A stretch of 64,000 bases of DNA, from the IMG/VR virus record IMGVR_UViG_3300027985_000843, positions 124,001 to 188,000 of that record; one strand, given 5' to 3'. The notes below the pieces were generated by a model that saw only the letters and a list, made by a program, of their open reading frames with translations, had not been told where the DNA came from and searched no databases. Made by a program: the position numbers and the translations under genes. Shown piece by piece: positions 1 through 42,559 of the stretch. How positions within the stretch are numbered: position 1 is the first letter of the stretch; the number at the start of each line of letters is the position of its first letter.

Positions 1-2953
1 AGAAGAGGGCCTCTCGAATCTTGCGGGACTCGTCTGCGTAGCCCATCTTCGCCAGAGGGATGACTTGGAAGTCGACCCCCGTGGTCGAGTCGATCGCATT
101 GATGAGGTCCGACTGCGCGGACCCTTGCCCAACAAGCTTCTGATTCAGCTCCGTCGAAACATTGGTACGGACGATCGGATCGGTTGTGTCCTTTTTCGCT
201 CCCGCCTTGAGCTGGATGGTTGTCTCTAGGTCGATGGCATTCAAGACGGCCTGTTTCGCGAGAACGTCTGCCGTCACGTGCCGCTGCTTGTTGAGAGCCC
301 GCTGGAACTCCTGAAGCAAGTCGTTGATCACGTAGGTCACGGCGAAATTCTCGTCATGGCTGTAGTCCACACTCACCGTCTGACCACTGAGGATGGCCGA
401 GGTGGTCGTGCGGACGACGGCCGCCGGAGTTGTTGCGGTGCCCTCGATGATCTCGAAGTCGGGGGCCACAGTGCTCGGGCCGTCGTATTCGATGGTCCGG
501 TCTTCCGAAAAGACTCGAAGCGTCGCTGTGTTGATGCCGATGGCTGCGAGCTTCTCCGAGAAGAAGCCGATCATGACATGCGTCTCATTGTTGACCGTGA
601 GAACATCGCCCGACGGCACACCTCCCACCTGGTTGATGGAGATGTAGTCCTGGGCGATGGTGCTCTCGCCATTCCACAGAGGATCCTCCGTCTTGTACAG
701 GTCGTAGCCCGCCGTGGAAGACAGAGTCCCAGACACCTCCCCGACAACCGACGTGACCCGCCGAACCGGCTGCAAGGTCGGGATGAACTTGTTCACACTG
801 CGATATCTCACGTCCGCGTGAATGACGTTGTCGATGGCAGTAACGAACGACTGAATGCTCACATCCAGCTGGAACGTCTGGTAGTCGAGGAGAACCACGC
901 CAGCCAAGTCGTAGTCGAGCCCCTGCGTCACGTTTCGGACCCCGAGTCCCTGGGCGATGTTGTCGAGAATCTCCACCAGCGGCGTGTCGACCGTTACCCG
1001 AGGATCAGTCACGCGGAAGATCAGGTTGACTGCATCCACGATCTGGCATTGCGTATCTCTCAGGACCTCGAAGGTGAAGGCAAACGTCTCCGTGACGGTC
1101 CGCTCTCGAACACCTTGGATCCAAATGTCCACCTTGCCGCCGATGTGCTTGTCTCGAACCTCATCGTAGTCGCGCATCATGAGGTCGTCCCCGGACTTTA
1201 CGACCTTGGCCCGTACGATGCCCTGCTGCTCGGCTGCGGTGGCAGCATAGCCGCCTTCCGTGCCCGTATCGACCGAAACGAAGCCAAGCTGCGCCCGGAC
1301 TGCGAGATCGTGGTTGCTTTCACGGTCCGTACCGAAGACGGTGGCCTCGGTGTTCGTCACGTTCATGCTTCCAGTCGCGGAGGCCGACTGGAAACTCGTG
1401 ATGGCCCCCGCCGACACATTGCCGTTGGCTCCGGGGTTCTCCGCCGTGATGGTGACAATCAGCTCGTACCGCTGCGTGTCGAAGTTGTAGTAGGCGTCAG
1501 CGTCTGCTGCTGGCAACAGGTAGGTGCCGCTCACGAGGAAGCGGACGGTGCCTGTCGACACGATGGTGCCCGAGGCGATCGTGATGTCCCGCGCGGGGCG
1601 AGTGGTCGTATAGAACACGGCCTGCCCTGTGGCCGGGCGGCCCGCAAGACGAGTCCGCTGGAAATTGCCCGCGAGCTTCTCAAACTGCGTGTCGATCAGC
1701 TGCTGAACCGCGATGTCCGTCGCGAACCCTAGAGCCGCCTTGAGGGCTGACTTGTAGGAGGACGAGGCCACCGCATCGGACACCTCGTCGCCATTGGCGT
1801 CATCGATGGGCAACAGGGTGAGGAAGCTCTGCGACCTGTGGACGAAGTCGAGGATGAACCAGATGCGCTCGGCCTCCGAGGCGAACGGATCAATCGACAC
1901 GTCCCGAGTGGTCGACCCGGGGAGCAAGCTGATCTCCTCGTTGACCCGCTTGATAGCGTCGAGGAAGTTGAGTGTCACCTGAAGCTGGGTCCGATCCGGA
2001 AGGTCCCGGATGGTCGTGTCGATGATGAGAGGCTTGCCCAGGATCTCCTGGCTGTACGGCGTCTCAAACTCCATCCTCTGCGTCGCGTCGTAGTAGACAC
2101 TGGTCACGACGTAGTAGAGGGGATCCTTGTCGTCCACGTCCGCGAACTGGTCGGAGTTGATAATCCCCGTCCCGCCGGCACGATTGTGGCGGAAATAGAG
2201 GTACTCCGTCCGATCCACCTCTTGCAGGTTGTAGCTCACCTGAAGGGTGTCGGCGTACCCAAACACGTCCAGTGAGTCGTCCACCAGCACGTTCTCGGTG
2301 ACGCCGAACGGGTCCTCTTCCGTGATCAACACATGGACGTTCGTCGAGGTCGTGGTGAAGGGCACGGCACTCGATGCAATGTCCACCAGCTCCTCATCGT
2401 AGTAGACGGACACCTCCGTCACCGGCGTCGCGTTGACCTTGAAGTAACCGGTCGTGCCACCAGGAGAAGTAGACGCGTAGAAGTTGAAGCCCCGGAACTC
2501 GAAGTCGCTTTCCTCAAGGCCCGTTGTGGCATTCGTCGCGACCACCGGCCGGGCCGCCATGACGTCGACGGAGTTGCGCCTACGGCGGAGCTTGATGCCA
2601 CTCGGGATGTCGACGGCCTGAACGACCTCCTCGACTCGGGTCACCTGGGCAGTAGCCGTGGGGCTGAGACTGCCCACCAGGTCGATTCCCCGAACCTGGA
2701 TGGTGTTGAGCCCGATCGACAGAGGGTAGCCGTCAGGATACGAAGACGGGTTGGGGAAGGTCCAGGTAGTGCCGTCGAGGTACACAAGGGTGGGGTCCGA
2801 GACGAAGGTCCCACCATCGAGGGCCACCTGAAGGTCCACGATGTTCGTGTCCATCGTCCCCGTCAACGTGATGTACCCAAGGTTCGTACTGAAGACGATG
2901 TCTTGAGCTGAGCCAGAACCGTCCCTGTAATTGATCTGCGGAGCTGTGGTCAT
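1..2953 (-). CDS. Baseplate J-like (wedge) protein, >980 aa, runs off the left edge
   Basis: Absent from the ORF track because it has no stop in the window. Hand translation from ATG 2953 (MTTAPQINYRDGSG) stays open in the parts read at both ends. It contains baseplate-J-like motifs PGSTTRD, LAGNF..TR..GRPATG, ITAENPGANGNV..GAI, VTNTEAT.FGTD.ES and GGKVDIW, and follows the gp25-like gene. Confidence 0.85.
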   Translation of the reverse strand, partial: MTTAPQINYRDGSGSAQDIVFSTNLGYITLTGTMDTNIVDLQVALDGGTFVSDPTLVYLDGTTWTFPNPSSYPDGYPLSIGLNTIQVRGIDLVGSLSPTATAQVTRVEEVVQAVDIPSGIKLRRRRNSVDVMAARPVVATNATTGLEESDFEFRGFNFYASTSPGGTTGYFKVNATPVTEVSVYYDEELVDIASSAVPFTTTSTNVHVLITEEDPFGVTENVLVDDSLDVFGYADTLQVSYNLQEVDRTEYLYFRHNRAGGTGIINSDQFADVDDKDPLYYVVTSVYYDATQRMEFETPYSQEILGKPLIIDTTIRDLPDRTQLQVTLNFLDAIKRVNEEISLLPGSTTRDVSIDPFASEAERIWFILDFVHRSQSFLTLLPIDDANGDEVSDAVASSSYKSALKAALGFATDIAVQQLIDTQFEKLAGNFQRTRLAGRPATGQAVFYTTTRPARDITIASGTIVSTGTVRFLVSGTYLLPAADADAYYNFDTQRYELIVTITAENPGANGNVSAGAITSFQSASATGSMNVTNTEATVFGTDRESNHDLAVRAQLGFVSVDTGTEGGYAATAAEQQGIVRAKVVKSGDDLMMRDYDEVRDKHIGGKVDIWIQGVRERTVTETFAFTFEVLRDTQCQIVDAVNLIFRVTDPRVTVDTPLVEILDNIAQGLGVRNVTQGLDYDLAGVVLLDYQTFQLDVSIQSFVTAIDNVIHADVRYRSVNKFIPTLQPVRRVTSVVGEVSGTLSSTAGYDLYKTEDPLWNGESTIAQDYISINQVGGVPSGDVLTVNNETHVMIGFFSEKLAAIGINTATLRVFSEDRTIEYDGPSTVAPDFEIIEGTATTPAAVVRTTTSAILSGQTVSVDYSHDENFAVTYVINDLLQEFQRALNKQRHVTADVLAKQAVLNAIDLETTIQLKAGAKKDTTDPIVRTNVSTELNQKLVGQGSAQSDLINAIDSTTGVDFQVIPLAKMGYADESRKIREALF

Positions 2954-30248: not shown

Positions 30249-31055
30249 CTACAGCCGCACGAGGACTTTGACGAGGGCTTCCAAGGGCAACAGTGTGCCC
30301 TTCACCGGGCTGTACAGGAAAGTCCCAGTGCTCTTCCAATCAGAGGGCTCCCCCATGGCCGCCTCGGCCTCGTTCAGGACATCCGCCCCCTTCAAGAGGT
30401 CGAAGGCCAGCAAGAGGCTTTTGCGGGCCGCCAGGACGTGGAGCCGGTCCCCCCTCTGACGAACCAACGCCCCCTTCAAGAAGCCCTGCCGAAACAGCTC
30501 GACCCAACCCTTCCTCAGGTCCTTGTGCTGCGTCTTCGCCAGAACGAAACCAACCGTGCCCACATCCAGCAATTCCGGCATCGGAACCCTGGGAGGCAAG
30601 GCGGGATAGGCGTCTTCCGTTATCGCGTAGAAAATCCACTCCACGACCGTAGCCAGACGCTTGTGCTGCTCCGACAACGACAGCCCCTCGGGCAGGTAGC
30701 TCTTCAGCAGCTCGAAGAACCGACCCATGTCCGACGTGATGTGGGCGCAACCGGACTCTCCGTACGCCTCCACCAGATGGGCTGCCACTATGAAGTCGGG
30801 TGTCCTCGGGTGAATGGCGAGCTGCCGGTTGAGAAACAGGGCGATGGCGAGCAGAGTGCTCACCGAATCCACCGATCGAGTCAGAAACTTGAGGGGAAAG
30901 GGCTTCCCCATGATCAGGTCGGAGTAGAAGTCCCCCAGGGCGGGCAGCCCTGTGTAGACATAGGGTCCCTTGAAAGTACCGAAGGCCACAACTGTATCTC
31001 CGACAACACCATCGTGTTTCGGATCGACAACGACCTGGAACTCAAACTCCTCCAT
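30249..31055 (-). CDS. Degenerate DHH/DHHA1-like protein (function tentative)
   Basis: Start at ATG 31055 (MEEFEF). C-terminal LNEAE....W.....SP..GT.LP.E.L resembles phage DHH-like proteins as recalled; no DHH triad present. Confidence 0.45.
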   Translation of the reverse strand: MEEFEFQVVVDPKHDGVVGDTVVAFGTFKGPYVYTGLPALGDFYSDLIMGKPFPLKFLTRSVDSVSTLLAIALFLNRQLAIHPRTPDFIVAAHLVEAYGESGCAHITSDMGRFFELLKSYLPEGLSLSEQHKRLATVVEWIFYAITEDAYPALPPRVPMPELLDVGTVGFVLAKTQHKDLRKGWVELFRQGFLKGALVRQRGDRLHVLAARKSLLLAFDLLKGADVLNEAEAAMGEPSDWKSTGTFLYSPVKGTLLPLEALVKVLVRL

Positions 31056-35699: not shown

Positions 35700-35732
35700 A
35701 AGGCCCGGCGTCAACAGCTGACGTCGGGCCTT
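35700..35732 (-). terminator. GC-rich hairpin after HU, candidate intrinsic terminator
   Basis: AAGGCCCGACGTCA-loop-TGACGCCGGGCCTT, 13/14 paired; the U-tract is weak (CCTTGTT). Confidence 0.55.
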
Positions 35733-35751: not shown

Positions 35752-36069
35752 TCAGGCAACGGCATCCTTGAGGGCCTTGACGGGGGCTGACTTGACGGCC
35801 TTCGAGGCCGGCTTGGCCTTGAACGTCATCTCTTCCCCCGTGAACGGATTGCGGCCCTTGCGGGCGGCCGTCGCGGGCTTGACCTTCACGGTGAACTTGG
35901 CGACGCCCGGAAGCGTGAAGACTCCCGCCGTCTTGAGTTGCTTCGCCATGATCCCCTGGACGGCGTTGAGGAAGCCGGCGGCCTCCGACTGGGTGCAACC
36001 GCAGTCTTCCGCGAGGGACTTGACGAATTCAGCCTTGGTCATTGGTTTCTTGGTGGTGGTTTTGCTCAT
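35752..36069 (-). CDS. hup: HU-family DNA-binding protein
   Basis: MTKAEFVKSLAE...FTLPGVAKF...KPAT.ARKGRNPFTGE.MTFKAKPA. True start ATG 36069 after GGGGAG. Confidence 0.92.
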   Translation of the reverse strand: MSKTTTKKPMTKAEFVKSLAEDCGCTQSEAAGFLNAVQGIMAKQLKTAGVFTLPGVAKFTVKVKPATAARKGRNPFTGEEMTFKAKPASKAVKSAPVKALKDAVA

Positions 36070-36121
36070 GCTCCCCCATATACACCAAGACGGGGAAGTT
36101 ACAGAGCAAATTTTCACGAGG

Positions 36122-36859
36122 CTAGCCCCTAAGAATCTTGGCGAATACCCGGATGGGGCCGTGAATCTTGATGGACCCCGACACCACCGAAGGGGCCACC
36201 ATGAACTTGACCTGAAGGTCTGTCACATACCCGGTGATGCCAGACAGGGTCTTCCGGCCACTGAGATGCAGCATCTGAGGGCCGTGAATCGTGTCGATGA
36301 ACTTCCGGTAGGTGCTCGCGATGGCACTATTGCCCGAGTTGTAATCCACCCGAAGGTAAGTCTCCCACGTGCTGCCAGTTCCGACGTCGTAGACGTCACA
36401 GGACGCCTCCACTTCGATGATGTCGTTGTTCGTGACATACTGACCGGACATATCCAACGTGAGCAATGTGGTGAGGTCTGTGGTGGCGATGACCGTCTCG
36501 TCAGACGTGGTCCCTGACACGTCCTCAGTTTCGTACTGACGAACATGGTAGTTGACCCGTGTTGGCTGCGACCATACAATCACACCCGAACCAGGATCGG
36601 CCGAATAGGTAGCAATGGTGCCGGCACCCTTTGACCACGCATTCAAGTAGGACGGGGAAGCATCATCGTCCCGACTCCACCCGGTAACACCGTAAACAGC
36701 GTTCACCGACTGCTCAAAACCGTTACCGGTCGAATAGAGCCGGGTCTTGATTGTGCCGGTACCTGACTCCCAAACCAGATGGAAGTTCGACAGGCCACGG
36801 TCATCGTATGAAGCGATGCCCCCAGGAGTTTGCAGGGACTTGTCTGTGAATTTGGGCAT
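36122..36859 (-). CDS. Hypothetical beta-rich protein, possibly virion-associated
   Basis: 245 aa, Ser/Thr/Gly/Tyr-rich; ATG with GAGGA; no family recognised. Confidence 0.75.
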   Translation of the reverse strand: MPKFTDKSLQTPGGIASYDDRGLSNFHLVWESGTGTIKTRLYSTGNGFEQSVNAVYGVTGWSRDDDASPSYLNAWSKGAGTIATYSADPGSGVIVWSQPTRVNYHVRQYETEDVSGTTSDETVIATTDLTTLLTLDMSGQYVTNNDIIEVEASCDVYDVGTGSTWETYLRVDYNSGNSAIASTYRKFIDTIHGPQMLHLSGRKTLSGITGYVTDLQVKFMVAPSVVSGSIKIHGPIRVFAKILRG

Positions 36860-36906: not shown

Positions 36907-38199
36907 TTACACGGGAAGCACATCCAGCAGCCGGTGCCTAAGGTACTCGGGATCTGTGTAAGGTTCGTCCTCACGGATCACCAAAAGGTGATAGCGACCA
37001 TCGTCGACAACTTGTCGAGCCTTCTCAGCGTCCCGTTCAACCATGGCATCGAACAGGATACGATCTTGGATGTAGACGCTCGGGAATGTCCAGTGCTGGT
37101 AGCCGTGAAACTCGACGATGAGGTTGTGGCTAGGGAAGAACCCGTCGAAGCGGAAGCGGTGCCCTGTCTTGGGGTTCGTGAACTTCCGGGGGCTCCACTC
37201 CATCTCGTAAGGGGTTCCTAGAACGTCCTTGACAGCCTCCAAACATAGAATCTGACGCAGAGCGTGCACCCTGACAGGCAATCCGAGTCGCACGCATTCC
37301 TTGCGGATCGTGGTTGCTGTATGGCCCAAGCCTCGCATGGCGTGTGCAAGAACCACCCTGCCATTAACCTGACGGTAGGGCTCAAGTTGCTCCGCCGTGA
37401 GTACAACCCGTGTGACTTCGGCTGACTTGCGGCTCATCTCGTGAAACCTGCCATCAGCCTTGTCCCGCTCAACACGGGCACCCACATACTTGGTCGAAAG
37501 CCGAAGCCCCAAAGACTCCATGTAGGCCGTGATAGTGGGTTCACAAAACCCAAGCTCTTCCGCCATGGCACGCCGATCCACAGCCCCGGTAGCGTCTAGG
37601 AACGGTGTGAAATCCACCTGGGATAAGTCCGCCTTGAGTCCATTCGTACAGGGACCGCCCGTCTTAAGGGCCGACAGCTTCTCAGCCGTGCTACGAAGGC
37701 TCGGATGGTCGCCTTTCGTGAGCCCCTTGCTCCACGACTTTCGGCCCTTCATCCCAGCCGCAGCACGGGCAACACGCTCGTCCGTCTCCTTGGTCAAGCC
37801 TCGGTTCCACCCCGCACTGGCCGACATTTTCGCCCGCGTCTCAGCAGACAGCTTCCGGCCCTTGAGTGGTGATGGCTTGCGGACCTTCGGTTTGGAAGCC
37901 TTGTCCCTTGCCTTGCAAGCAGGGCAACGAAGGTCTTTCGAGGCGGATGTGGCCGCTACCTCATGAACAACTCCACAAGGGCACGTGACCGCCTTCCTGA
38001 GCCCCTTGCGGGGCTTCTCAGCATGGGCCTTAGAGATAGCAGCACGTCGGTTCGACTCACAGACTTCCGACCGAATACGAGCCTCGGGAAACTGCTCTCG
38101 GTACGCATCCGCCGTGATGCCGTGTGCTGCCTTGAGGTGCCTTGCAAGGGTTTGGGCTTGGTGCCCGCAGATGAGGCAGGAGACTAGGGTTTCCAGCAT
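36907..38199 (-). mobile_element. Free-standing homing-type endonuclease: MucR-like Zn finger + NUMOD3 + PD-(D/E)XK (Vsr/DUF559-like) domain
   Basis: CLICG....L..HL...HG.T...YR..FP; KGRKLSAETRAKMS; two W.KGLTK repeats; FRFDGF......VEFHGYQHW. Inserted just downstream of the sheath gene. Confidence 0.8.
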
Positions 38200-38205
38200 G
38201 CTTTC

Positions 38206-38244
38206 AGCCTAGCTCTTGATTATCAGCCTGTCAAGAGCTAGGTT
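38206..38244. promoter_or_regulatory. Perfect 12-bp inverted repeat containing sigma70-like promoters on both strands
   Basis: CCTAGCTCTTGA (38208-19) / TCAAGAGCTAGG (38231-42). Minus strand: TTGACA-17-TAGGCT-6-ATG. Plus strand: TTGATT-17-TAGGTT. Confidence 0.7.
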
Positions 38245-38263
38245 TAGAAAGTTCTGGCCCCTG

Positions 38264-41200
38264 TTAAATCCTTGCTCTCAAGTTGAATGTCAGGACAATG
38301 TACAGAAGCGGGAAAATCGGCTGGTAGTACGACTCGTAGCGCATGATGGTCGGGTCATCCGGATCGACCGTTGCCGAGATACCGGTGAAGGCTCCGACGA
38401 TCTCCGCCTGAACGAGCTGCTTGAACAGCGAGGTCATCGAGACCTCGACCTCGTTCGTACGGCTGCTCAGGTACTTGGTTCCCACGAAGGAGTCGAGAAC
38501 CACACGGCTCTGTTGCTGCACGTAGTCGGCGATCTGCGTGACCGTCGGCAGACGGGTCAGAACGCTGGTCATGTCGGTCGTCAAACCCTGTCGGATTCGG
38601 ACGATCGGGGACAGGTCCTCCAGGAGCGTGATGCCCGCGACAGCCGTCTGGTTCATCTGGATCGGATCCAGGATGCGAGGCAGTCGAGTGAAGCCGATGA
38701 CGTGCCGACGCGTCCACGGGGTCGCGACGTCCACAGCCGGGGAGATCACCGCACCACCCACCGCAGCGGCGAGGAAGGTGCCGTCCACCAGAACCTCGAA
38801 GTTCTCTCCCAGCTCGTTGGTCAGGGTGACAACTGCCGAGTCCGGATAGACGGCCGCGATGCGGTTGCTCAAGAGAGCCTTGGCGATGGTCTGAGCACTG
38901 GTCGGAGAAGTCCCCGACGCAAACCCGATGATGCCCATTCGCTCCGACTGGTTCCGGATGTTCGACTGCGTTTCGCAGTGCTGCATCAGGAAGCTGTAGA
39001 CCGACGTGTCGGTGGACAGCGGGAGCAAAAGGTTGGGCCGGATGTTGCCCGGCAACGGAGTCGCCAGGTCAGCGATGGCGTTGTTGAAGCTCTGTGCCGA
39101 CGCCTGGTTGGTGTTGACCACCTTGAGCACCTGCTTGATGCCCACGAGGACTGCACCGTTCTGGATCGCCAGGTAGGATGCGAGGGTGACCCGGTTCTCT
39201 GCCGAGAGGGGGCCGAAGTTCGCCTCGATCGTCTTGAACTGCTGGTACAGACGCGTCGAGAAGTCCTGCTTCATGAACTTGTAGGTGATGTAGTAGTAGT
39301 CGCCGATGGCCGGTTCCAAACCGCTCGGGTCGAACGTCTGGACAGTCGCGGTGTCGTCCACTCCCACACCCACGGTGTCGGTGACCACCACTTCGAGGCC
39401 GCCGATCGAGAGCCACGGAACGGCCGGGTTGACCTGGAAGGTCGGCGAGACGATCATGGTGAAGTTGCCGGTCGGGGTGTAGGTCCCGGTGGCTGCTGCC
39501 AAGACGGTGAAGCGCAGACCCGTGGTAGCGTCCGTGTAGGTCTGACCGGGGATGCCGGTACCGGCGGACCCACTCGCGTTCGAGGAGGTCACGGTGAAGA
39601 TGTCGTGTGCGTCCTCTCCGTTGTCGCCGCTGGTGCCCGGGATGATCTCAGTCCCAGTACCCTCGATGAAGGCACTCGTGGTGCCCGTCGCGAAGGCGAT
39701 GGTCGAGGTCGTCGCACCCGTCGCGATCGACTCGATGGTGACGTAGTCCTGACCCTCGATCTGGCTCACATACGCGACACCATCGGTCACGAAGCTTGCC
39801 GTTGCCACGAGTTCGTCGACGATCTCCTGGGCCCCGACCTGCGTCCAGCTCGCTCGATCTCCCGAGGTGAAGCCAAGGACTGTCAGAGCGGTGGAGGTTG
39901 ACAAGATCTCGACACTCGAACCCGCGTTGAAGGTTGTGGAAGTGAGGCGGACCTTGTTGAGGTTGGCGAGAGTGCCAACCGATGCCACGCCTGTGACCAC
40001 AGAGTTGATGTCACCGGCGATCGTAGCCGCTGTCACCGCCGCGCCTGCCGTCAGGGTGACCTGGTAGTCGACACCGTCCACTCGGACGTCGAGCTGGTCG
40101 TCCACGCCCGCCGTGACCAGGAAGGGGCCGGCCTCGGTACCAAGGAGGGTGGCTGGCTTCGTGGTCGCCGTCGGAGTACCGCTGGCGCTCTGGAAGGTCT
40201 CGAACCCAAGGTACGTCTCCGCAGTGCCCTGACGAACAGCCACGGTCGAGGCGTGGTCGAAGCCGCCGGGGAGGGCCGCCGGGGTCGAGTAGGATTCGAT
40301 GATGATGAACGCGGCCGTCGCTCCGATGCTCACCGCCTGAGCGAGGGCATTCGGTGCGGTGGCCGTGAAGTCGATACCACCGGAACCTGAGAAGTCCGCC
40401 GCGTCGATGGCCGCATTGATGTCGGTGACGATCTGCGCAGGGGTCGGGTTCGGCAAGCCTGTCGTCAACGTGACGTCGATCTCGTTCGGCGAACCGTCGA
40501 TCGTGATCTTCAGGGAGTCGTTGACAGCGGCCGTGATGGTTGCCGTCAAGCTGCCCGCCGTCAGGGCGATGCGGCTGCCAACAAGATAACCCTTGGCGGC
40601 CGTGTCGAGGTCGGTGACGTAAGGGGTCCCATTGAGGGTCGTACGCCAGAAGTCCGAGGCCCCAGCGAACATGCTGTAGGGGGCGGGCCCTTCGTTCGTG
40701 TAGACGGCATTGAGAGCCGCCGACGAAGAGAAGGTCACCGTCACGATCTCAGCCACCGGGGTTCCCGCGCCTGTGTGGAACGCGTCCGGAATGGTCTCCA
40801 CACCTCGCGGCCACTGCACCGTCTCCGGCAGGCCGGTCTTGACCCCAAAGCGGCACTGGTACAGGTTCGTGGCGTACGTCGTCGAATACACTTCGTACTG
40901 ACCCACGCCCACGGACCCTGCCACCTTGTTGGTGAAGATGTAGGTGTCATCCGAGAGACGGGAGTACCAGAAGGTCGCGTAAGCGTTGTGGTCCGGCGGG
41001 ACCGCGTCCTTCAAGGTGATGGTGCGGGTGGTTGCATCCACCTGCGTCACGGTGACGGGGTTGCGGCCGAGCGCGTCGCGGAGGTCGCGACCGGTGTACA
41101 CGATGACGAGATCAGGCCGATTGGTGTTCAGGCCAACGCGGTTGTTGCTGATCGCGGTGTACACGGAAGACCCCAACGGGGTATCGCGGCCGTTACCCAA

Positions 41201-42559
41201 GGTGGGAATCTCGGGCAGCAAGAACTGATTGGGGCTCTGTACCGCCGGCACCACCGTGGTGTTGACCACCCGGGTGCACTCGGCGTTGTAGAGCTTGTCG
41301 TCCACGAGGGTCGGGATGATCTGGGTGTCGTCGAAGACGGTGGCCCCAGCCGTTCTGCTCGTCGAAGCAACCACGTAGCTCGCGCCCCAGTGGATGATCG
41401 ACACGTCCGCACTCGGGTTCGAGACAACGAAGTCTTGCTCTTCGATGTAGTCGTTGCGGTTCGGAGAGAACCCGCAGCGAATGACATCGGTGACCATCGT
41501 GTTGGGCAGGTAGTCGAAGGTGTCCTGCCAGGTGTTCGCCCAGTATTGGATGGTCACGGTCGAACCGCTCGCGGGCGGCTGCGACAGGGTCACAACGCCA
41601 TTGGTACCATCCACCGAGATGGGGATGACCTGCACGCCATTGACCATGACCACGACCTTGCTCGTATCCGTCGTGGTGATGCCGCCGTCGGTGCCATCGA
41701 CGATCGGACGCTGGAAGACACGGAAGGCTGTGTTGCGGCTCGTCTGGGCACCGGCTGCGAATCCGAGGATCCCGTTGGCGTTGCCGCTGCCGATGACGAT
41801 GCTCTGAGCCGCCGTGAGACGCAGGTGGCTGCCACCTTGCTCGTCCGTGTAGACGGAGGTCGTCAGGCCGGTGATGGCTGCCGCGTCGACAAGGGCCTTG
41901 AGGCCGGCGGCCGTGTAGGTTCCCGCTGCGAAGACGACCGTTGACTCGGAGCCGCCATCGATGGTCAGGGAGAACGTGTCGGTGGTGCTGAGCGTGATGG
42001 TGTACGTCGCTGCTGCGGGAGCCGTCAGGATGGCCTGTTCCGTCGTCACCTGGTCGGACACGATGTCCGTAAAGGCGGTGTCGCCACGGTGGAAGTAGTA
42101 GGTGCAACGAACGTTGGAGCCCACGGGCGGGGGCACCTGGAGGACGACGTAACCGCCGGTCCCCTGAACACTGCCAACTGCAACCTGCTGCCCGTCCACG
42201 GTCACGCTGACATGACGAGGGCTGTTCGCCGTACGCCCGAAGCCTTCACCGGTGACGATCGGGTAGTTGCGGACACGGAACCGGGAAACGGCACCGTTGG
42301 CTGCCCCCAGAACGGGGCTGTTGGGGTTCGTCGAGTCAACCACGAACCTTTGCGAGACATCCTCACTGACAATCTGCTGGTCCAGGGTGGCAGAAGAGCC
42401 ACGAACCAACTCCAGGTCCGGCTGCTCCAACTCTTCCTGTCCCACGCCGATGAGCACAGGGATTCTCAGCCCCGCGACCATGTTGGCCGCATTGGCTTCG
42501 GTGAGGGTGCGGGTGTAGATCCCAGGGGGTACGTACGTAGCGAGAGGTCCAAGAGCCAC
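38264..42559 (-). CDS. Tail sheath protein with very large insertions (1431 aa)
   Basis: N-terminal YVPPGIYT. C-terminal sheath domain (AGITLLE...IRQGLTT, PTV..IADYV, D..DPT.......YQPIFPL.YI...F). GTG start with AGGAG. Confidence 0.92.
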   Translation of the reverse strand: MALGPLATYVPPGIYTRTLTEANAANMVAGLRIPVLIGVGQEELEQPDLELVRGSSATLDQQIVSEDVSQRFVVDSTNPNSPVLGAANGAVSRFRVRNYPIVTGEGFGRTANSPRHVSVTVDGQQVAVGSVQGTGGYVVLQVPPPVGSNVRCTYYFHRGDTAFTDIVSDQVTTEQAILTAPAAATYTITLSTTDTFSLTIDGGSESTVVFAAGTYTAAGLKALVDAAAITGLTTSVYTDEQGGSHLRLTAAQSIVIGSGNANGILGFAAGAQTSRNTAFRVFQRPIVDGTDGGITTTDTSKVVVMVNGVQVIPISVDGTNGVVTLSQPPASGSTVTIQYWANTWQDTFDYLPNTMVTDVIRCGFSPNRNDYIEEQDFVVSNPSADVSIIHWGASYVVASTSRTAGATVFDDTQIIPTLVDDKLYNAECTRVVNTTVVPAVQSPNQFLLPEIPTLGNGRDTPLGSSVYTAISNNRVGLNTNRPDLVIVYTGRDLRDALGRNPVTVTQVDATTRTITLKDAVPPDHNAYATFWYSRLSDDTYIFTNKVAGSVGVGQYEVYSTTYATNLYQCRFGVKTGLPETVQWPRGVETIPDAFHTGAGTPVAEIVTVTFSSSAALNAVYTNEGPAPYSMFAGASDFWRTTLNGTPYVTDLDTAAKGYLVGSRIALTAGSLTATITAAVNDSLKITIDGSPNEIDVTLTTGLPNPTPAQIVTDINAAIDAADFSGSGGIDFTATAPNALAQAVSIGATAAFIIIESYSTPAALPGGFDHASTVAVRQGTAETYLGFETFQSASGTPTATTKPATLLGTEAGPFLVTAGVDDQLDVRVDGVDYQVTLTAGAAVTAATIAGDINSVVTGVASVGTLANLNKVRLTSTTFNAGSSVEILSTSTALTVLGFTSGDRASWTQVGAQEIVDELVATASFVTDGVAYVSQIEGQDYVTIESIATGATTSTIAFATGTTSAFIEGTGTEIIPGTSGDNGEDAHDIFTVTSSNASGSAGTGIPGQTYTDATTGLRFTVLAAATGTYTPTGNFTMIVSPTFQVNPAVPWLSIGGLEVVVTDTVGVGVDDTATVQTFDPSGLEPAIGDYYYITYKFMKQDFSTRLYQQFKTIEANFGPLSAENRVTLASYLAIQNGAVLVGIKQVLKVVNTNQASAQSFNNAIADLATPLPGNIRPNLLLPLSTDTSVYSFLMQHCETQSNIRNQSERMGIIGFASGTSPTSAQTIAKALLSNRIAAVYPDSAVVTLTNELGENFEVLVDGTFLAAAVGGAVISPAVDVATPWTRRHVIGFTRLPRILDPIQMNQTAVAGITLLEDLSPIVRIRQGLTTDMTSVLTRLPTVTQIADYVQQQSRVVLDSFVGTKYLSSRTNEVEVSMTSLFKQLVQAEIVGAFTGISATVDPDDPTIMRYESYYQPIFPLLYIVLTFNLRARI

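What the first reader, a model, noticed from the sequence alone, without database searches (positions are those of the whole stretch)
38199..38244. Palindromic bidirectional sigma70-like promoter: leaderless endonuclease mRNA one way, antisense to sheath the other
A perfect 12-bp inverted repeat gives TTGACA-17-TAGGCT on the minus strand, ending 6 nt before the endonuclease ATG with no SD (leaderless geometry). By symmetry it gives TTGATT-17-TAGGTT on the plus strand, firing into the 3' end of the sheath gene. The palindrome could also be an operator for the endonuclease's MucR-like finger, or an mRNA hairpin in read-through transcripts. A mobile gene bringing its own promoter plus antisense control of a late gene would be unusual.
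Basis: partly seen in the sequence, partly recalled or inferred. Interest (0 to 1): 0.6.

Follow-up and report, generated by a model that had tools for sequence, protein, structure and literature searches.

The report
Homing-endonuclease promoter wrapped in a hairpin
A mobile endonuclease gene inserted behind the tail-sheath gene of a huge phage brings its own bacterial-type promoter, placed so that its mRNA should start at the ATG. The promoter sits inside a conserved hairpin, a new variant of the control logic known from phage T4 homing endonucleases.

Summary
A perfect 12-bp inverted repeat lies at 38208-38219 / 38231-38242. On the minus strand it carries TTGACA-17-TAGGCT, then 6 nt, then the ATG at 38199, with no Shine-Dalgarno sequence.

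Comparison with about 20 relatives from huge-phage contigs supports the minus-strand promoter:
- TTGACA-16/18-TAnnnT-5..12 nt-ATG is kept while the surrounding sequence is scrambled.
- It has decayed in the closest relative, whose endonuclease gene is dead.
- It also precedes two other homing-endonuclease-like genes of the same phage.

Leaderless geometry is normal in this phage: about 80 genes follow a different, -35-less motif, GGTGTA-N10-ATG.

The hairpin is also real. Six of 12 pairs show compensatory changes and 94% of cells are paired. Its 5' arm lies upstream of the predicted transcription start, so it can form only in read-through RNA from the sheath gene.

The plus-strand "antisense promoter" is the mirror image of the palindrome. 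It is present only in the immediate sub-clade and is never followed by a start codon. An operator role is not supported, because arm sequences differ between homologues.

No transcript data could be obtained. Verdict: a new variant of the T4-type arrangement of a promoter inside a hairpin. Interest is moderate.

The parts
38264..42559 (-). Tail sheath gene (1431-aa ORF). The start is not verified; a GTG is preceded by AAAGGAGA. The stop is TAA at 38264-38266.
   Evidence: tblastn: 40% identity to uncultured 485-kb phage LR745208.1; 33% to Tunturiibacter phage Tunturi_5 'tail sheath'; the C-terminus resembles actinophage and phage G sheaths. SD seen.
38229..38234 (-). -35 hexamer TTGACA of the endonuclease cassette promoter.
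   Evidence: Sequence. A perfect or 5/6 TTGACA sits at 16-18 nt from TAnnnT in 14 or more distinct homologous cassettes. It has decayed to TCGGCA in the dead allele L016.
38206..38211 (-). -10 hexamer TAGGCT (TAnnnT type), 6 nt upstream of the ATG.
   Evidence: Homologues carry TAGnnT, TATCTT, TAAGCT or TATAGT at the same distance.
38197..38199 (-). ATG start codon of the endonuclease. The predicted transcription start is at or next to the A at 38199 (leaderless). This is inferred, not measured.
   Evidence: Geometry: the -10 ends 6 nt upstream. There is no SD-like 4-mer in -18..-4. The same geometry occurs at about 80 GGTGTA-N10-ATG genes in the genome.
38208..38242 (-). Core hairpin: 12-bp perfect inverted repeat (38208-38219 / 38231-38242) with an 11-nt loop. 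It overlaps the -35 and the -10.
   Evidence: Covariation in 8 orthologues: 93.7% of cells paired, 6 of 12 pairs with double changes, 0 of 500 shuffles reach this, slid controls 18-48%.
38193..38257 (-). Extended imperfect hairpin (27-nt arms, 74% complementary). The outer stems CCAG/CUGG and CUUUC/GAAAG flank the AUG.
   Evidence: The outer stems are kept through wobble pairs in L016.
36907..38199 (-). Free-standing homing-endonuclease-like gene (430 aa): Ros/MucR zinc finger, a weak NUMOD3-like motif, and a C-terminal Vsr-like nuclease domain.
   Evidence: Pfam ROS_MUCR 2e-8. NUMOD3 0.016. AF2 model with pLDDT 84.8. Foldseek: Vsr prob 0.99, I-Bth0305I catalytic domain prob 1.0 with TM 0.64, Ros prob 1.0. 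Invariant E334, D352, E363, H369, D390, K393. Present or absent in the same slot across relatives. GC3 is 0.66, against 0.82 for the sheath gene.
38216..38244 (+). Mirror-image promoter-like match TTGATT-17-TAGGTT on the plus strand. No start codon follows it.
   Evidence: Present in all 5 members of the WIN sub-clade as a consequence of the palindrome. Absent in 9 of 13 other cassettes.
36122..36859 (-). 245-aa ORF directly downstream of the endonuclease. It is preceded by GTGACC-18-TATCAT-10-ATG and GAGGA. It has no family match and no homologue in any fetched relative.
35752..36086 (-). HU-like DNA-binding protein gene (ATG 36069) with the phage's native promoter motif GGTGTA (36086-36081), 11 nt, then ATG.
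   Evidence: Sequence. Pfam Bac_DNA_binding 6.8e-19.

Best explanation
The element is the 5' control module of a free-standing homing-endonuclease cassette. The cassette is inserted between the stop codon of the tail-sheath gene and that gene's terminator in a huge phage of at least 372 kb.

(1) TTGACA-17-TAGGCT on the minus strand is a sigma70-type promoter carried by the cassette. It differs from the phage's own -35-less CGGTGTA promoters. Its -10 ends 6 nt before the ATG, so the cassette's own mRNA should begin at or next to the AUG and be translated as a leaderless mRNA. That is the translation mode that about 80 other genes of this phage appear to use.

(2) The inverted repeat is a structure selected as a hairpin. 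Its 5' arm lies upstream of the predicted start, so it cannot form in the cassette's own transcript. It can form only in RNA that reads through from the sheath gene. There it most likely insulates the two genes. It keeps the SD-less internal AUG structured and untranslated, or blocks re-initiation after the sheath stop. It may also serve as a 3' stabilising or processing hairpin for the sheath message.

Shown by sequence and comparison: the motifs, their conservation, their decay in the dead allele, and the covariation. Inferred: promoter activity, the transcription start, read-through from the sheath gene, and what the hairpin does.
For: Promoter:
- TTGAC(A/N)-16..18-TAnnnT, then 5-12 nt, then the start codon, recurs in front of 14 or more distinct homologues (30-80% protein identity). 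Their flanking sequence does not otherwise align, and some are not adjacent to the sheath gene.
- In the closest relative L016 (sheath C-terminus 91% identical) the endonuclease is truncated after about codon 30. There the signals have decayed: TTGACA to TCGGCA, TAGGCT to TAAGTC, ATG to ATA.
- Two further homing-endonuclease-like genes in the same genome have the same layout. A LAGLIDADG gene has the identical TTGACA-17-TAGGCT-6-ATG. A second MucR-finger/Vsr-like gene has TTGACA-16-TAACGG-6-ATG.
- I estimate about 0.006 such perfect matches expected by chance over about 450 gene starts.
- The phage has a sigma70-family gene and no detectable RNA polymerase of its own, so it must use the host core enzyme.

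Leaderless geometry:
- None of 19 such genes has an SD-like 4-mer.
- GGTGTA is followed by ATG at 10-11 nt in 73 cases and precedes about 80 ORFs.

Hairpin:
- The core helix is 93.7% paired over 8 orthologues, with 6 of 12 pairs showing double changes. None of 500 shuffles reaches this.
- L016 keeps 11 of 12 pairs through three compensatory changes.
- In other sub-clades, unrelated arm sequences form hairpins at the same place.
- The 12 cassettes of this family have mean MFE z = -3.5, against -0.84 for 80 native leaderless promoters (Mann-Whitney p = 1e-5).
- In the cassettes where the predicted hairpin was clear, the 5' arm lies upstream of the predicted start.

Transcription unit:
- There is no terminator-like site between the sheath stop and the endonuclease.
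- A canonical terminator follows the endonuclease in L054.
- Endonuclease-free alleles have that terminator directly after the sheath stop.

Precedent: T4 I-TevI, I-TevII, I-TevIII, segB and Aeh1 mobE have a promoter inside a hairpin that forms only on upstream-initiated transcripts (PMC2988022).
Against: - There are no transcript data.
- The -10 TAGGCT matches TATAAT at only 3 of 6 positions, and the host is unknown.
- Occlusion of the start codon is modest. The unpaired probability over -10..+10 is 0.33 in the read-through context, against 0.41 in controls. For this window it is 0.42, against 0.47 in its own leaderless RNA. In the MFE fold the AUG lies in an internal loop.
- An SD-less internal AUG would be poorly translated anyway, so the need for a hairpin is not obvious.
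- The plus-strand RNA of this window folds better than the sense RNA by 7.5 kcal/mol. Across 20 sequences the sense strand is favoured in only 14. An RNA-level, sense-strand function is therefore not proven.
- Compensatory-looking changes in quasi-palindromes can arise by template switching during replication, without selection (established knowledge).
- L016 keeps the hairpin after the endonuclease died. This fits a role for the sheath mRNA better than a role in controlling endonuclease translation.
Confidence: 0.62

Rival explanations
1. Truly bidirectional palindromic promoter. The plus-strand TTGATT-17-TAGGTT also fires and makes a non-coding antisense RNA into the 3' end of the sheath gene, which modulates this late gene.
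For: - All five members of the immediate sub-clade (WIN, L052, L054, L056, L057) have an antisense match. Three have TTGACT (5/6), and L052 is perfectly symmetric.
- The plus-strand RNA folds very stably (-53.1 kcal/mol, z = -5.7).
- Genuine back-to-back divergent promoter pairs (TACACC..GGTGTA) exist elsewhere in this genome.
Against: - The antisense match follows automatically from a palindrome centred on the spacer, so its retention adds no independent evidence.
- It is absent in 9 of 13 other cassettes that keep the sense promoter and a hairpin. It is also absent in L016.
- No start codon follows it. Every credible promoter in this genome is followed by ATG at 5-7 nt, and the divergent pairs have an ORF on both sides.
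- In this window the match is only 7 of 12.
Confidence: 0.1
2. The palindrome is a DNA operator. The endonuclease, through its Ros/MucR-type finger or another dimeric regulator, binds it and represses its own promoter. This would resemble I-TevI autorepression or the C-boxes of restriction-modification controller proteins.
For: - The palindrome overlaps both promoter hexamers.
- The protein has a DNA-binding zinc finger.
- I-TevI represses its own promoter through an overlapping operator (PMC2988022).
- Leaderless C-protein genes with palindromic operators are known (PMC2175313, listed).
Against: - Homologues share a conserved finger: 70-75% identity over short N-terminal fragments (about 30-54 residues), with C8, C11, H21 and H26 invariant or nearly so. 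Yet their arm sequences, loop lengths (3-37 nt) and arm positions relative to -35 and -10 are unrelated.
- A LAGLIDADG gene with HTH motifs instead of the finger has the same layout.
- G·U pairs occur in the stems.
- The hairpin is kept in L016, where the protein is gone.
- There is no similarity between the promoter region and endonuclease-free alleles, so no operator that mimics the homing site as in I-TevI.
Confidence: 0.1
3. The hairpin is mainly the 3'-end element of the sheath mRNA: a terminator for the polymerase in use, or a processing or stabilising hairpin. It replaces the displaced native terminator. Its overlap with the endonuclease promoter would then be incidental compaction.
For: - It lies 22-56 nt after the sheath stop. 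Endonuclease-free alleles have their terminator hairpin at that place.
- It is retained with compensatory changes in L016 after the endonuclease and its promoter decayed.
- The extended duplex of about 21 bp is in the size range of RNase III substrates (established knowledge).
Against: - No U-run follows the stem, whereas the native terminators of relatives have clear T-runs.
- Cassettes that are not adjacent to the sheath gene (L010-L014, L022, L029), and the two other endonuclease-like genes elsewhere in this genome, also have a hairpin spanning promoter to start codon.
- Some relatives (L010) have a separate hairpin after the sheath stop as well as the promoter-spanning one.
Confidence: 0.18

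Closest known systems
T4-type control of homing endonuclease genes (I-TevI, I-TevII, I-TevIII, segB; mobE of phage Aeh1): a promoter placed inside a hairpin that forms only on upstream-initiated transcripts (PMC2988022)
   Same: - A mobile endonuclease gene embedded in a host transcription unit.
- Its own promoter immediately upstream of the ORF.
- A stable hairpin whose 5' arm lies upstream of that promoter's start, so only read-through RNA can fold it.
- The hairpin abuts or covers the translation start.
   Different: - The T4 hairpins sequester a consensus Shine-Dalgarno sequence about 8 nt before the AUG. Here there is no SD at all, and the gene's own mRNA is predicted to be leaderless.
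- The promoters in T4 are phage middle or late types. Here it is a host sigma70-type promoter with -35 and -10, unlike the phage's own GGTGTA motif.
- Occlusion of the AUG is only partial in this window.
- Nothing has been measured here.
Leaderless mRNAs made from TAnnnT -10 promoters about 6-7 nt upstream of the start codon, as is common in Actinobacteria and Deinococcus (established knowledge)
   Same: A -10 of TAnnnT type ends 5-7 nt before an ATG, with no SD. The same geometry is used genome-wide in this phage.
   Different: Here the arrangement is a portable module of a mobile gene in a huge phage of unknown host, it carries a perfect -35, and it is wrapped in a hairpin. The transcription start has not been mapped.
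I-Bth0305I / EDxHD homing endonucleases and the Vsr endonuclease fold (PMC3239194)
   Same: The modelled C-terminal domain matches Vsr (prob 0.99) and the I-Bth0305I catalytic domain (prob 1.0, TM 0.64). Acidic and His residues are invariant. The gene is phage-borne and variably present in one slot.
   Different: - The motif reads E-F-H-G-x-Q-H rather than E-D-x-H-D.
- The gene is free-standing rather than encoded in an intron or intein.
- The N-terminus is a Ros/MucR-type Cys2His2 finger plus a weak NUMOD3-like motif.
- No Pfam nuclease model matches it.
Autoregulated controller (C) protein genes of restriction-modification systems: leaderless transcripts with palindromic C-box operators (PMC2175313)
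   Same: A palindrome overlapping the promoter of a leaderless gene that belongs to a mobile nuclease system.
   Different: C-boxes are conserved binding sites for the cognate protein. Here the palindrome sequence is not conserved across homologues with a conserved DNA-binding domain, and it covaries like a helix.

Membership tests
sigma70-type (-35/-10) bacterial promoter | -35 hexamer close to TTGACA | tested here: met
   TTGACA, 6 of 6, at 38234-38229 on the minus strand.
sigma70-type (-35/-10) bacterial promoter | Spacer of 17 +/- 1 nt and a -10 hexamer close to TATAAT, with the key A at position 2 and T at position 6 | tested here: inconclusive
   The spacer is 17 nt. TAGGCT has T1, A2 and T6 but only 3 of 6 overall, so the scanner does not list it. 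Homologues all carry TAnnnT.
sigma70-type (-35/-10) bacterial promoter | Purifying selection on the hexamers relative to their flanks | tested here: met
   The hexamers are kept in 14 or more divergent cassettes whose flanks do not align. They have decayed in the pseudogene allele L016.
sigma70-type (-35/-10) bacterial promoter | Transcription initiates 5-9 nt downstream of the -10 with sigma70 holoenzyme | not testable with these tools
The host is unknown.
Leaderless mRNA | No Shine-Dalgarno sequence and an AUG start codon | tested here: met
   There is no GGAG, GAGG, AGGA or AAGG in -18..-4, here or in 18 related or analogous genes. The start codon is ATG.
Leaderless mRNA | The 5' end of the transcript coincides with the start codon | not testable with these tools
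   Only the geometry is available: the -10 ends 6 nt before the A. The same geometry occurs at about 80 GGTGTA-N10-ATG genes.
T4-type homing-endonuclease regulatory hairpin (I-TevI / mobE type) | A stable hairpin at the 5' end of the ORF that is conserved as a structure | tested here: met
   z = -4.4. Covariation: 6 of 12 pairs, 93.7% paired. The 12 cassettes of this family have mean z = -3.5, against -0.84 for controls.
T4-type homing-endonuclease regulatory hairpin (I-TevI / mobE type) | [quoted passage not shown] | tested here: not met
   There is no RBS to sequester. The AUG is only partly occluded: unpaired probability 0.42 here, family mean 0.33, controls 0.41.
T4-type homing-endonuclease regulatory hairpin (I-TevI / mobE type) | The gene's own promoter is placed so that its transcript lacks the 5' arm | tested here: met
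   By geometry only. The 5' arm lies at -43..-32 relative to the ATG, and the predicted start is at the ATG. The same holds in the homologues where the predicted hairpin was clear.
T4-type homing-endonuclease regulatory hairpin (I-TevI / mobE type) | The gene lies inside a longer upstream-initiated transcription unit | tested here: inconclusive
   No terminator-like site lies between the sheath stop and the ORF. A terminator follows the ORF in L054. Read-through itself has not been observed.
Intrinsic (Rho-independent) terminator | A G+C-rich stem followed by a run of U | tested here: not met
   The stem is followed by GCUGAAAGCAUG. It is not listed by the terminator scan. Native terminators in endonuclease-free alleles do have T-runs.
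Operator of an autoregulatory DNA-binding protein | A binding-site sequence conserved among homologues that share the DNA-binding domain | tested here: not met
   Arm sequences, loop sizes and positions differ among sub-clades although the finger is conserved.
Vsr-like / EDxHD homing endonuclease | Vsr-type nuclease fold with conserved catalytic acidic and His residues | tested here: met
   Foldseek: 1vsr and 1cw0 prob 0.99; 3r3p prob 1.0 with TM 0.64. All Foldseek E-values were above 0.001. Invariant E334, D352, E363, H369, D390, K393.
Vsr-like / EDxHD homing endonuclease | The E-D-x-H-D motif, and site-specific cleavage of the endonuclease-free allele | tested here: inconclusive
   The motif here is E-F-H-G-Y-Q-H. 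Cleavage cannot be tested. Mobility is inferred from presence or absence in one slot and from a decayed remnant.

The most novel reading that the evidence does not exclude
Homing-endonuclease cassettes of this clade of huge phages carry a portable expression module. It is a host sigma70-type -35/-10 promoter that makes a leaderless mRNA, and it is deliberately different from the phage's own -35-less CGGTGTA leaderless promoters. It would therefore follow a different temporal programme, possibly separating host sigma from the phage-encoded sigma. The module is wrapped in an RNA hairpin that insulates it from the late sheath transcript. That hairpin has been co-opted as part of the sheath mRNA 3' end, which would explain why it survives with compensatory changes after the endonuclease has died (L016).
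Probability: 0.3. Interest if true: 0.65.

Novelty: new variant of a known kind. Interest (0 to 1): 0.55.

Why it matters
Mobile endonuclease genes must be expressed without harming the genes they land next to. How they manage this is known almost only from T4-like phages.

Here the same logic, a private promoter inside a hairpin that forms only on host read-through RNA, appears in an unrelated clade of uncultured huge phages. It is rebuilt for a leaderless translation regime and uses a host-type promoter that the phage's own genes do not use.

If confirmed, this would show three things:
- The arrangement is a convergent, general solution for free-standing homing endonucleases.
- The cassettes carry a compact portable leaderless expression module of about 45 nt.
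- An uncharacterised endonuclease family exists (Ros/MucR finger plus Vsr-like nuclease) with at least 149 metagenomic members.

The genome-wide CGGTGTA-N10-ATG motif found in passing offers a way into the transcription programme of these huge phages.

Tried and rejected
No start or end of any RNA is shown.
- DNA similarity to known phages: a megablast of 8 kb found nothing. tblastn of the endonuclease against the phage collection found nothing.
- Simple promoter and terminator scan: it lists neither proposed promoter and no terminator at the site. The promoter case rests on comparison, not on the window alone.
- Genome-wide enrichment of TTGACN-16/18-TAnnnT: 11 sites, against about 13 expected by composition (my estimate), so there is no overall enrichment. 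A shuffle control that counts any ORF of 40 aa or more gave 0-6 hits, against 5 observed. Only the restriction to real gene starts, and to endonuclease genes, is informative.
- Strand of the structure: comparing sense and antisense folds gave only a weak preference for the sense strand (14 of 20). This window goes the other way.
- Start-codon occlusion: only a modest effect. Strict "sequestration" as in T4 is therefore not claimed.
- Operator resembling the homing site, as for I-TevI: there are only chance-level 7-9-mers between the promoter region and endonuclease-free alleles, the sheath 3' end and the helicase 5' end.
- ssDNA-promoter idea (Frpo-like): rejected on anatomy. The -35 and -10 lie on opposite arms and would pair with each other rather than rebuild a duplex promoter.
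- Pfam and PDB sequence searches for the nuclease domain: no match. Only the fold comparison identified it, and all its Foldseek E-values were above 0.001.
- Phage RNA polymerase: no hit to the RNAP beta-subunit Pfam family PF00562. The T7-type model PF00940 rang in no control genome, so its blank says nothing.
Full report
**Setting**

The window is bases 124001-188000 of a 371,739-bp IMG/VR viral contig (CheckV completeness 78%, about 59% G+C). All credible genes around the finding lie on the minus strand.

- The 1431-aa ORF at 38264-42559 is a tail sheath. tblastn gives 40% identity to an uncultured 485-kb phage and 33% to the annotated sheath of Tunturiibacter phage Tunturi_5. Its C-terminal 350 residues resemble the sheaths of actinophages and phage G.
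- The 430-aa ORF at 36907-38199 follows it after 64 nt.

**Observation**

- The perfect 12-bp arms are at 38208-38219 and 38231-38242.
- The minus strand reads TTGACA (38234-38229), 17 nt, TAGGCT (38211-38206), 6 nt, ATG (38199).
- The plus strand reads TTGATT (38216-38221), 17 nt, TAGGTT (38239-38244).

The repeat continues imperfectly to 38193-38257 and then brackets the ATG. Perfect stems of this length are rare: 7 in the genome, against about 0.5 expected. The RNA fold is significantly stable, with z = -4.4 for the sense strand and -5.7 for the antisense strand.

A plain consensus scan lists neither promoter, because both -10 boxes match TATAAT at only 3 of 6 positions.

**The gene is a mobile endonuclease**

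The domain evidence is as follows.

- Pfam finds only an N-terminal Ros/MucR zinc finger (E = 2e-8) and a weak NUMOD3 motif.
- At least 149 homologues exist, all from metagenomic contigs, several of them 300-480 kb long. None carries a functional name.
- An AlphaFold2 model built on 42 homologues has pLDDT 84.8, and above 90 in the C-terminal domain.
- In Foldseek the best matches are the Vsr endonuclease (prob 0.99) and the catalytic domain of the homing endonuclease I-Bth0305I (prob 1.0, TM 0.64). The N-terminus matches Ros. All Foldseek E-values were above 0.001, so these are weak matches by that measure.
- E334, D352, E363, H369, D390 and K393 are invariant.

The mobility evidence comes from 35 related sheath loci. 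The slot right after the sheath stop is hypervariable.

- Many relatives have a homologue of this gene there.
- Others have unrelated genes.
- Several go straight from a canonical hairpin-plus-T-run terminator to the UvrD-type helicase gene.

The closest relative, L016, has a sheath C-terminus 91% identical. It retains only the first 30 or so codons, with ATG changed to ATA. GC3 of the gene is 0.66, against 0.82 for the sheath gene. Nuclease activity and homing remain inferred.

**The minus-strand promoter is supported by comparison**

I anchored on the start codons of the homologues. The pattern TTGAC(A/N), 16-18 nt, TAnnnT, 5-12 nt, ATG or GTG recurs in 14 or more distinct sequences.

- These homologues share only 30-80% protein identity, and their flanks do not otherwise align.
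- The set includes cassettes that are not adjacent to the sheath gene.
- In L016, where the gene is dead, the -35, the -10 and the ATG have all decayed.

Within the same genome, two other homing-endonuclease-like genes have the same layout.

- A LAGLIDADG gene has the identical TTGACA-17-TAGGCT-6-ATG.
- A second MucR-finger/Vsr-like gene has TTGACA-16-TAACGG-6-ATG.

None of 19 such genes has an SD-like 4-mer. Structural genes such as the sheath gene do have one.

The phage encodes a sigma70-family protein. No hit to the RNAP beta-subunit family was found, and the T7-type model gave no control signal, so its blank is uninformative. The phage therefore appears to depend on the host core RNA polymerase.

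**Leaderless geometry is the norm in this phage**

GGTGTA is followed by ATG at exactly 10 nt in 50 cases and at 11 nt in 23 cases. It precedes about 80 ORFs.

- The logo reads (c/t)C-GGTG-TAnnnT, then 6 nt, then ATG, with no -35 signal.
- The motif often occurs as back-to-back divergent pairs.
- It also precedes the helicase gene in relatives and the HU-like gene at 36069 in the window.

The endonuclease cassette therefore shares the leaderless geometry but uses a different promoter type, one that depends on a -35.

**The hairpin**

In an alignment of 8 orthologues, the 12-pair core helix is 93.7% paired. Six pairs show changes on both sides. None of 500 shuffles reaches the observed values, and slid controls pair at 18-48%. 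L016 keeps 11 of 12 pairs through three compensatory double changes, although two of those changes destroy its -35.

In other sub-clades, hairpins of unrelated sequence and 8-20 bp occupy the same place. In the cassettes where the predicted hairpin was clear, the 5' arm lies upstream of the predicted start and the 3' arm abuts or covers the start codon.

The 12 cassettes of this family are much more structured than the phage's native leaderless promoters: mean z = -3.5 against -0.84, p = 1e-5. The second MucR-finger gene has z = -2.7 and the LAGLIDADG gene -1.8.

**What the hairpin does is less certain**

Points in favour of an insulating role in read-through RNA:

- No U-run follows the stem, so it is not a canonical terminator.
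- A canonical terminator follows the endonuclease in L054. This suggests that the cassette sits inside the sheath transcription unit.
- The layout mirrors T4 I-TevI and mobE, where a hairpin that forms only on upstream-initiated RNA blocks translation and the gene's own promoter lies inside it (PMC2988022).

Points against, or leaving the question open:

- Predicted occlusion of the start region is only modest: 0.33 against 0.41 in controls, and 0.42 for this window.
- The sense strand is favoured over the antisense strand in only 14 of 20 sequences, and this window goes the other way.
- The hairpin survives in L016 after the gene died. That points to a role in the sheath mRNA.
- Quasi-palindrome template switching could mimic compensatory change.

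**The antisense promoter and the operator**

The plus-strand match is present in all five members of the immediate sub-clade. In L052 it is perfectly symmetric. This follows automatically from a palindrome centred on the spacer. The match is absent in 9 of 13 other cassettes and in L016. No start codon ever follows it, unlike every credible promoter in this genome.

An operator is unlikely for four reasons.

- Palindrome sequences and positions differ among homologues with a conserved finger.
- The LAGLIDADG gene lacks the finger but has the same layout.
- The promoter region shows no resemblance to endonuclease-free alleles.
- The stems contain G·U pairs.

**Verdict**

The promoter, the leaderless geometry, the mobile gene with its own promoter, and the read-through hairpin are supported. 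Antisense control of the sheath gene and an operator role are not.

This is a new variant of the T4-type module of a promoter inside a hairpin, adapted to leaderless translation in a huge-phage clade. It sits in front of an uncharacterised Vsr-like homing-endonuclease family. Everything about activity remains to be measured.

Noticed in passing
Whole genome G000. In the window: GGTGTA at 36086-36081 (-) before ATG 36069, and at about 31071 (-) before an ATG near 31055.: A genome-wide motif, (c/t)C-GGTG-TAnnnT, then 6-7 nt, then ATG (that is, GGTGTA-N10/11-ATG), precedes about 80 ORFs. It has no -35 signal and prefers C at -1. It looks like the phage's main promoter class and would give leaderless mRNAs. 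It is also present before the helicase gene in relatives.
   Followed up: partly
G000 19029/19035, 26191/26202, 27522/27535, 28649/28655, 34190/34205, 50607/50613, 314773/314774, 317660/317666 (outside the window): Back-to-back divergent GGTGTA promoters (TACACC..GGTGTA). Most have an ATG about 10 nt away on both sides. They look like genuine compact bidirectional leaderless promoter pairs.
   Followed up: no
G000:283659-283769 (-), a 307-aa ORF (locus L058): The phage encodes a sigma70-family protein (Sigma70_r2, 24.1 bits, at the cut-off). No RNAP beta-subunit hit was found. The two promoter classes might be read by different sigma factors.
   Followed up: partly
G000: ATG 268262 (-), 312 aa; ATG 9923 (-), 312 aa; ATG 275588 (-): There are more homing-endonuclease-like genes in the phage.
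- A LAGLIDADG gene with the identical TTGACA-17-TAGGCT-6-ATG.
- A second MucR-finger protein with a classical Vsr/DUF559-like motif (IAIEVDG..H), TTGACA-16-TAACGG-6-ATG and a hairpin.
- An HNH_3 gene that is SD-led and sits right after a tRNA-like sequence.
   Followed up: partly
window 36122-36859 (-): A 245-aa ORF directly downstream of the endonuclease. It has no Pfam or PHROG match and no homologue in any of the 40 or more related loci. It may be a second, unique insertion in the same hotspot.
   Followed up: partly
window 35752-36069 (-): An HU/IHF-like DNA-binding protein gene (Bac_DNA_binding, 6.8e-19) lies between the hotspot and the helicase gene. It is followed by a terminator-like hairpin (about 35702-35730). 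GGTATA-N10-TTG then precedes the UvrD-type helicase ORF, which may be a one-mismatch variant of the native promoter with a TTG start.
   Followed up: partly
L056:2937-4058; L054:2932-4154; L057:2755-4183: In relatives the same sheath-helicase slot holds other cargo downstream of the endonuclease: a GmrSD_N-domain protein (L056) and strings of small ORFs. The slot is a general insertion hotspot.
   Followed up: no
L006:5254-5271; L057:2739-2757; L023:3741-3760: In relatives the native GGTGTA-N-ATG promoter of the next gene overlaps the 3' end of the endonuclease ORF. This recalls the T4 cases where promoters of downstream genes are embedded in homing-endonuclease genes.
   Followed up: no
window 38250-38262 (-) and the equivalent positions in L005, L008, L009, L016: A short conserved GGCCAGA just after the sheath stop occurs in several endonuclease-containing alleles (and in the remnant allele L016) but not in endonuclease-free ones. 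It may be the left end of the cassette or a remnant of the target site.
   Followed up: no
window 38264-42559 (-): The sheath protein is unusually long at 1431 aa. Only the last 350 or so residues resemble ordinary sheaths. The remainder is Thr/Ala/Gly-rich, with repeated Ig-like-looking segments and a weak DUF2460 hit.
   Followed up: no
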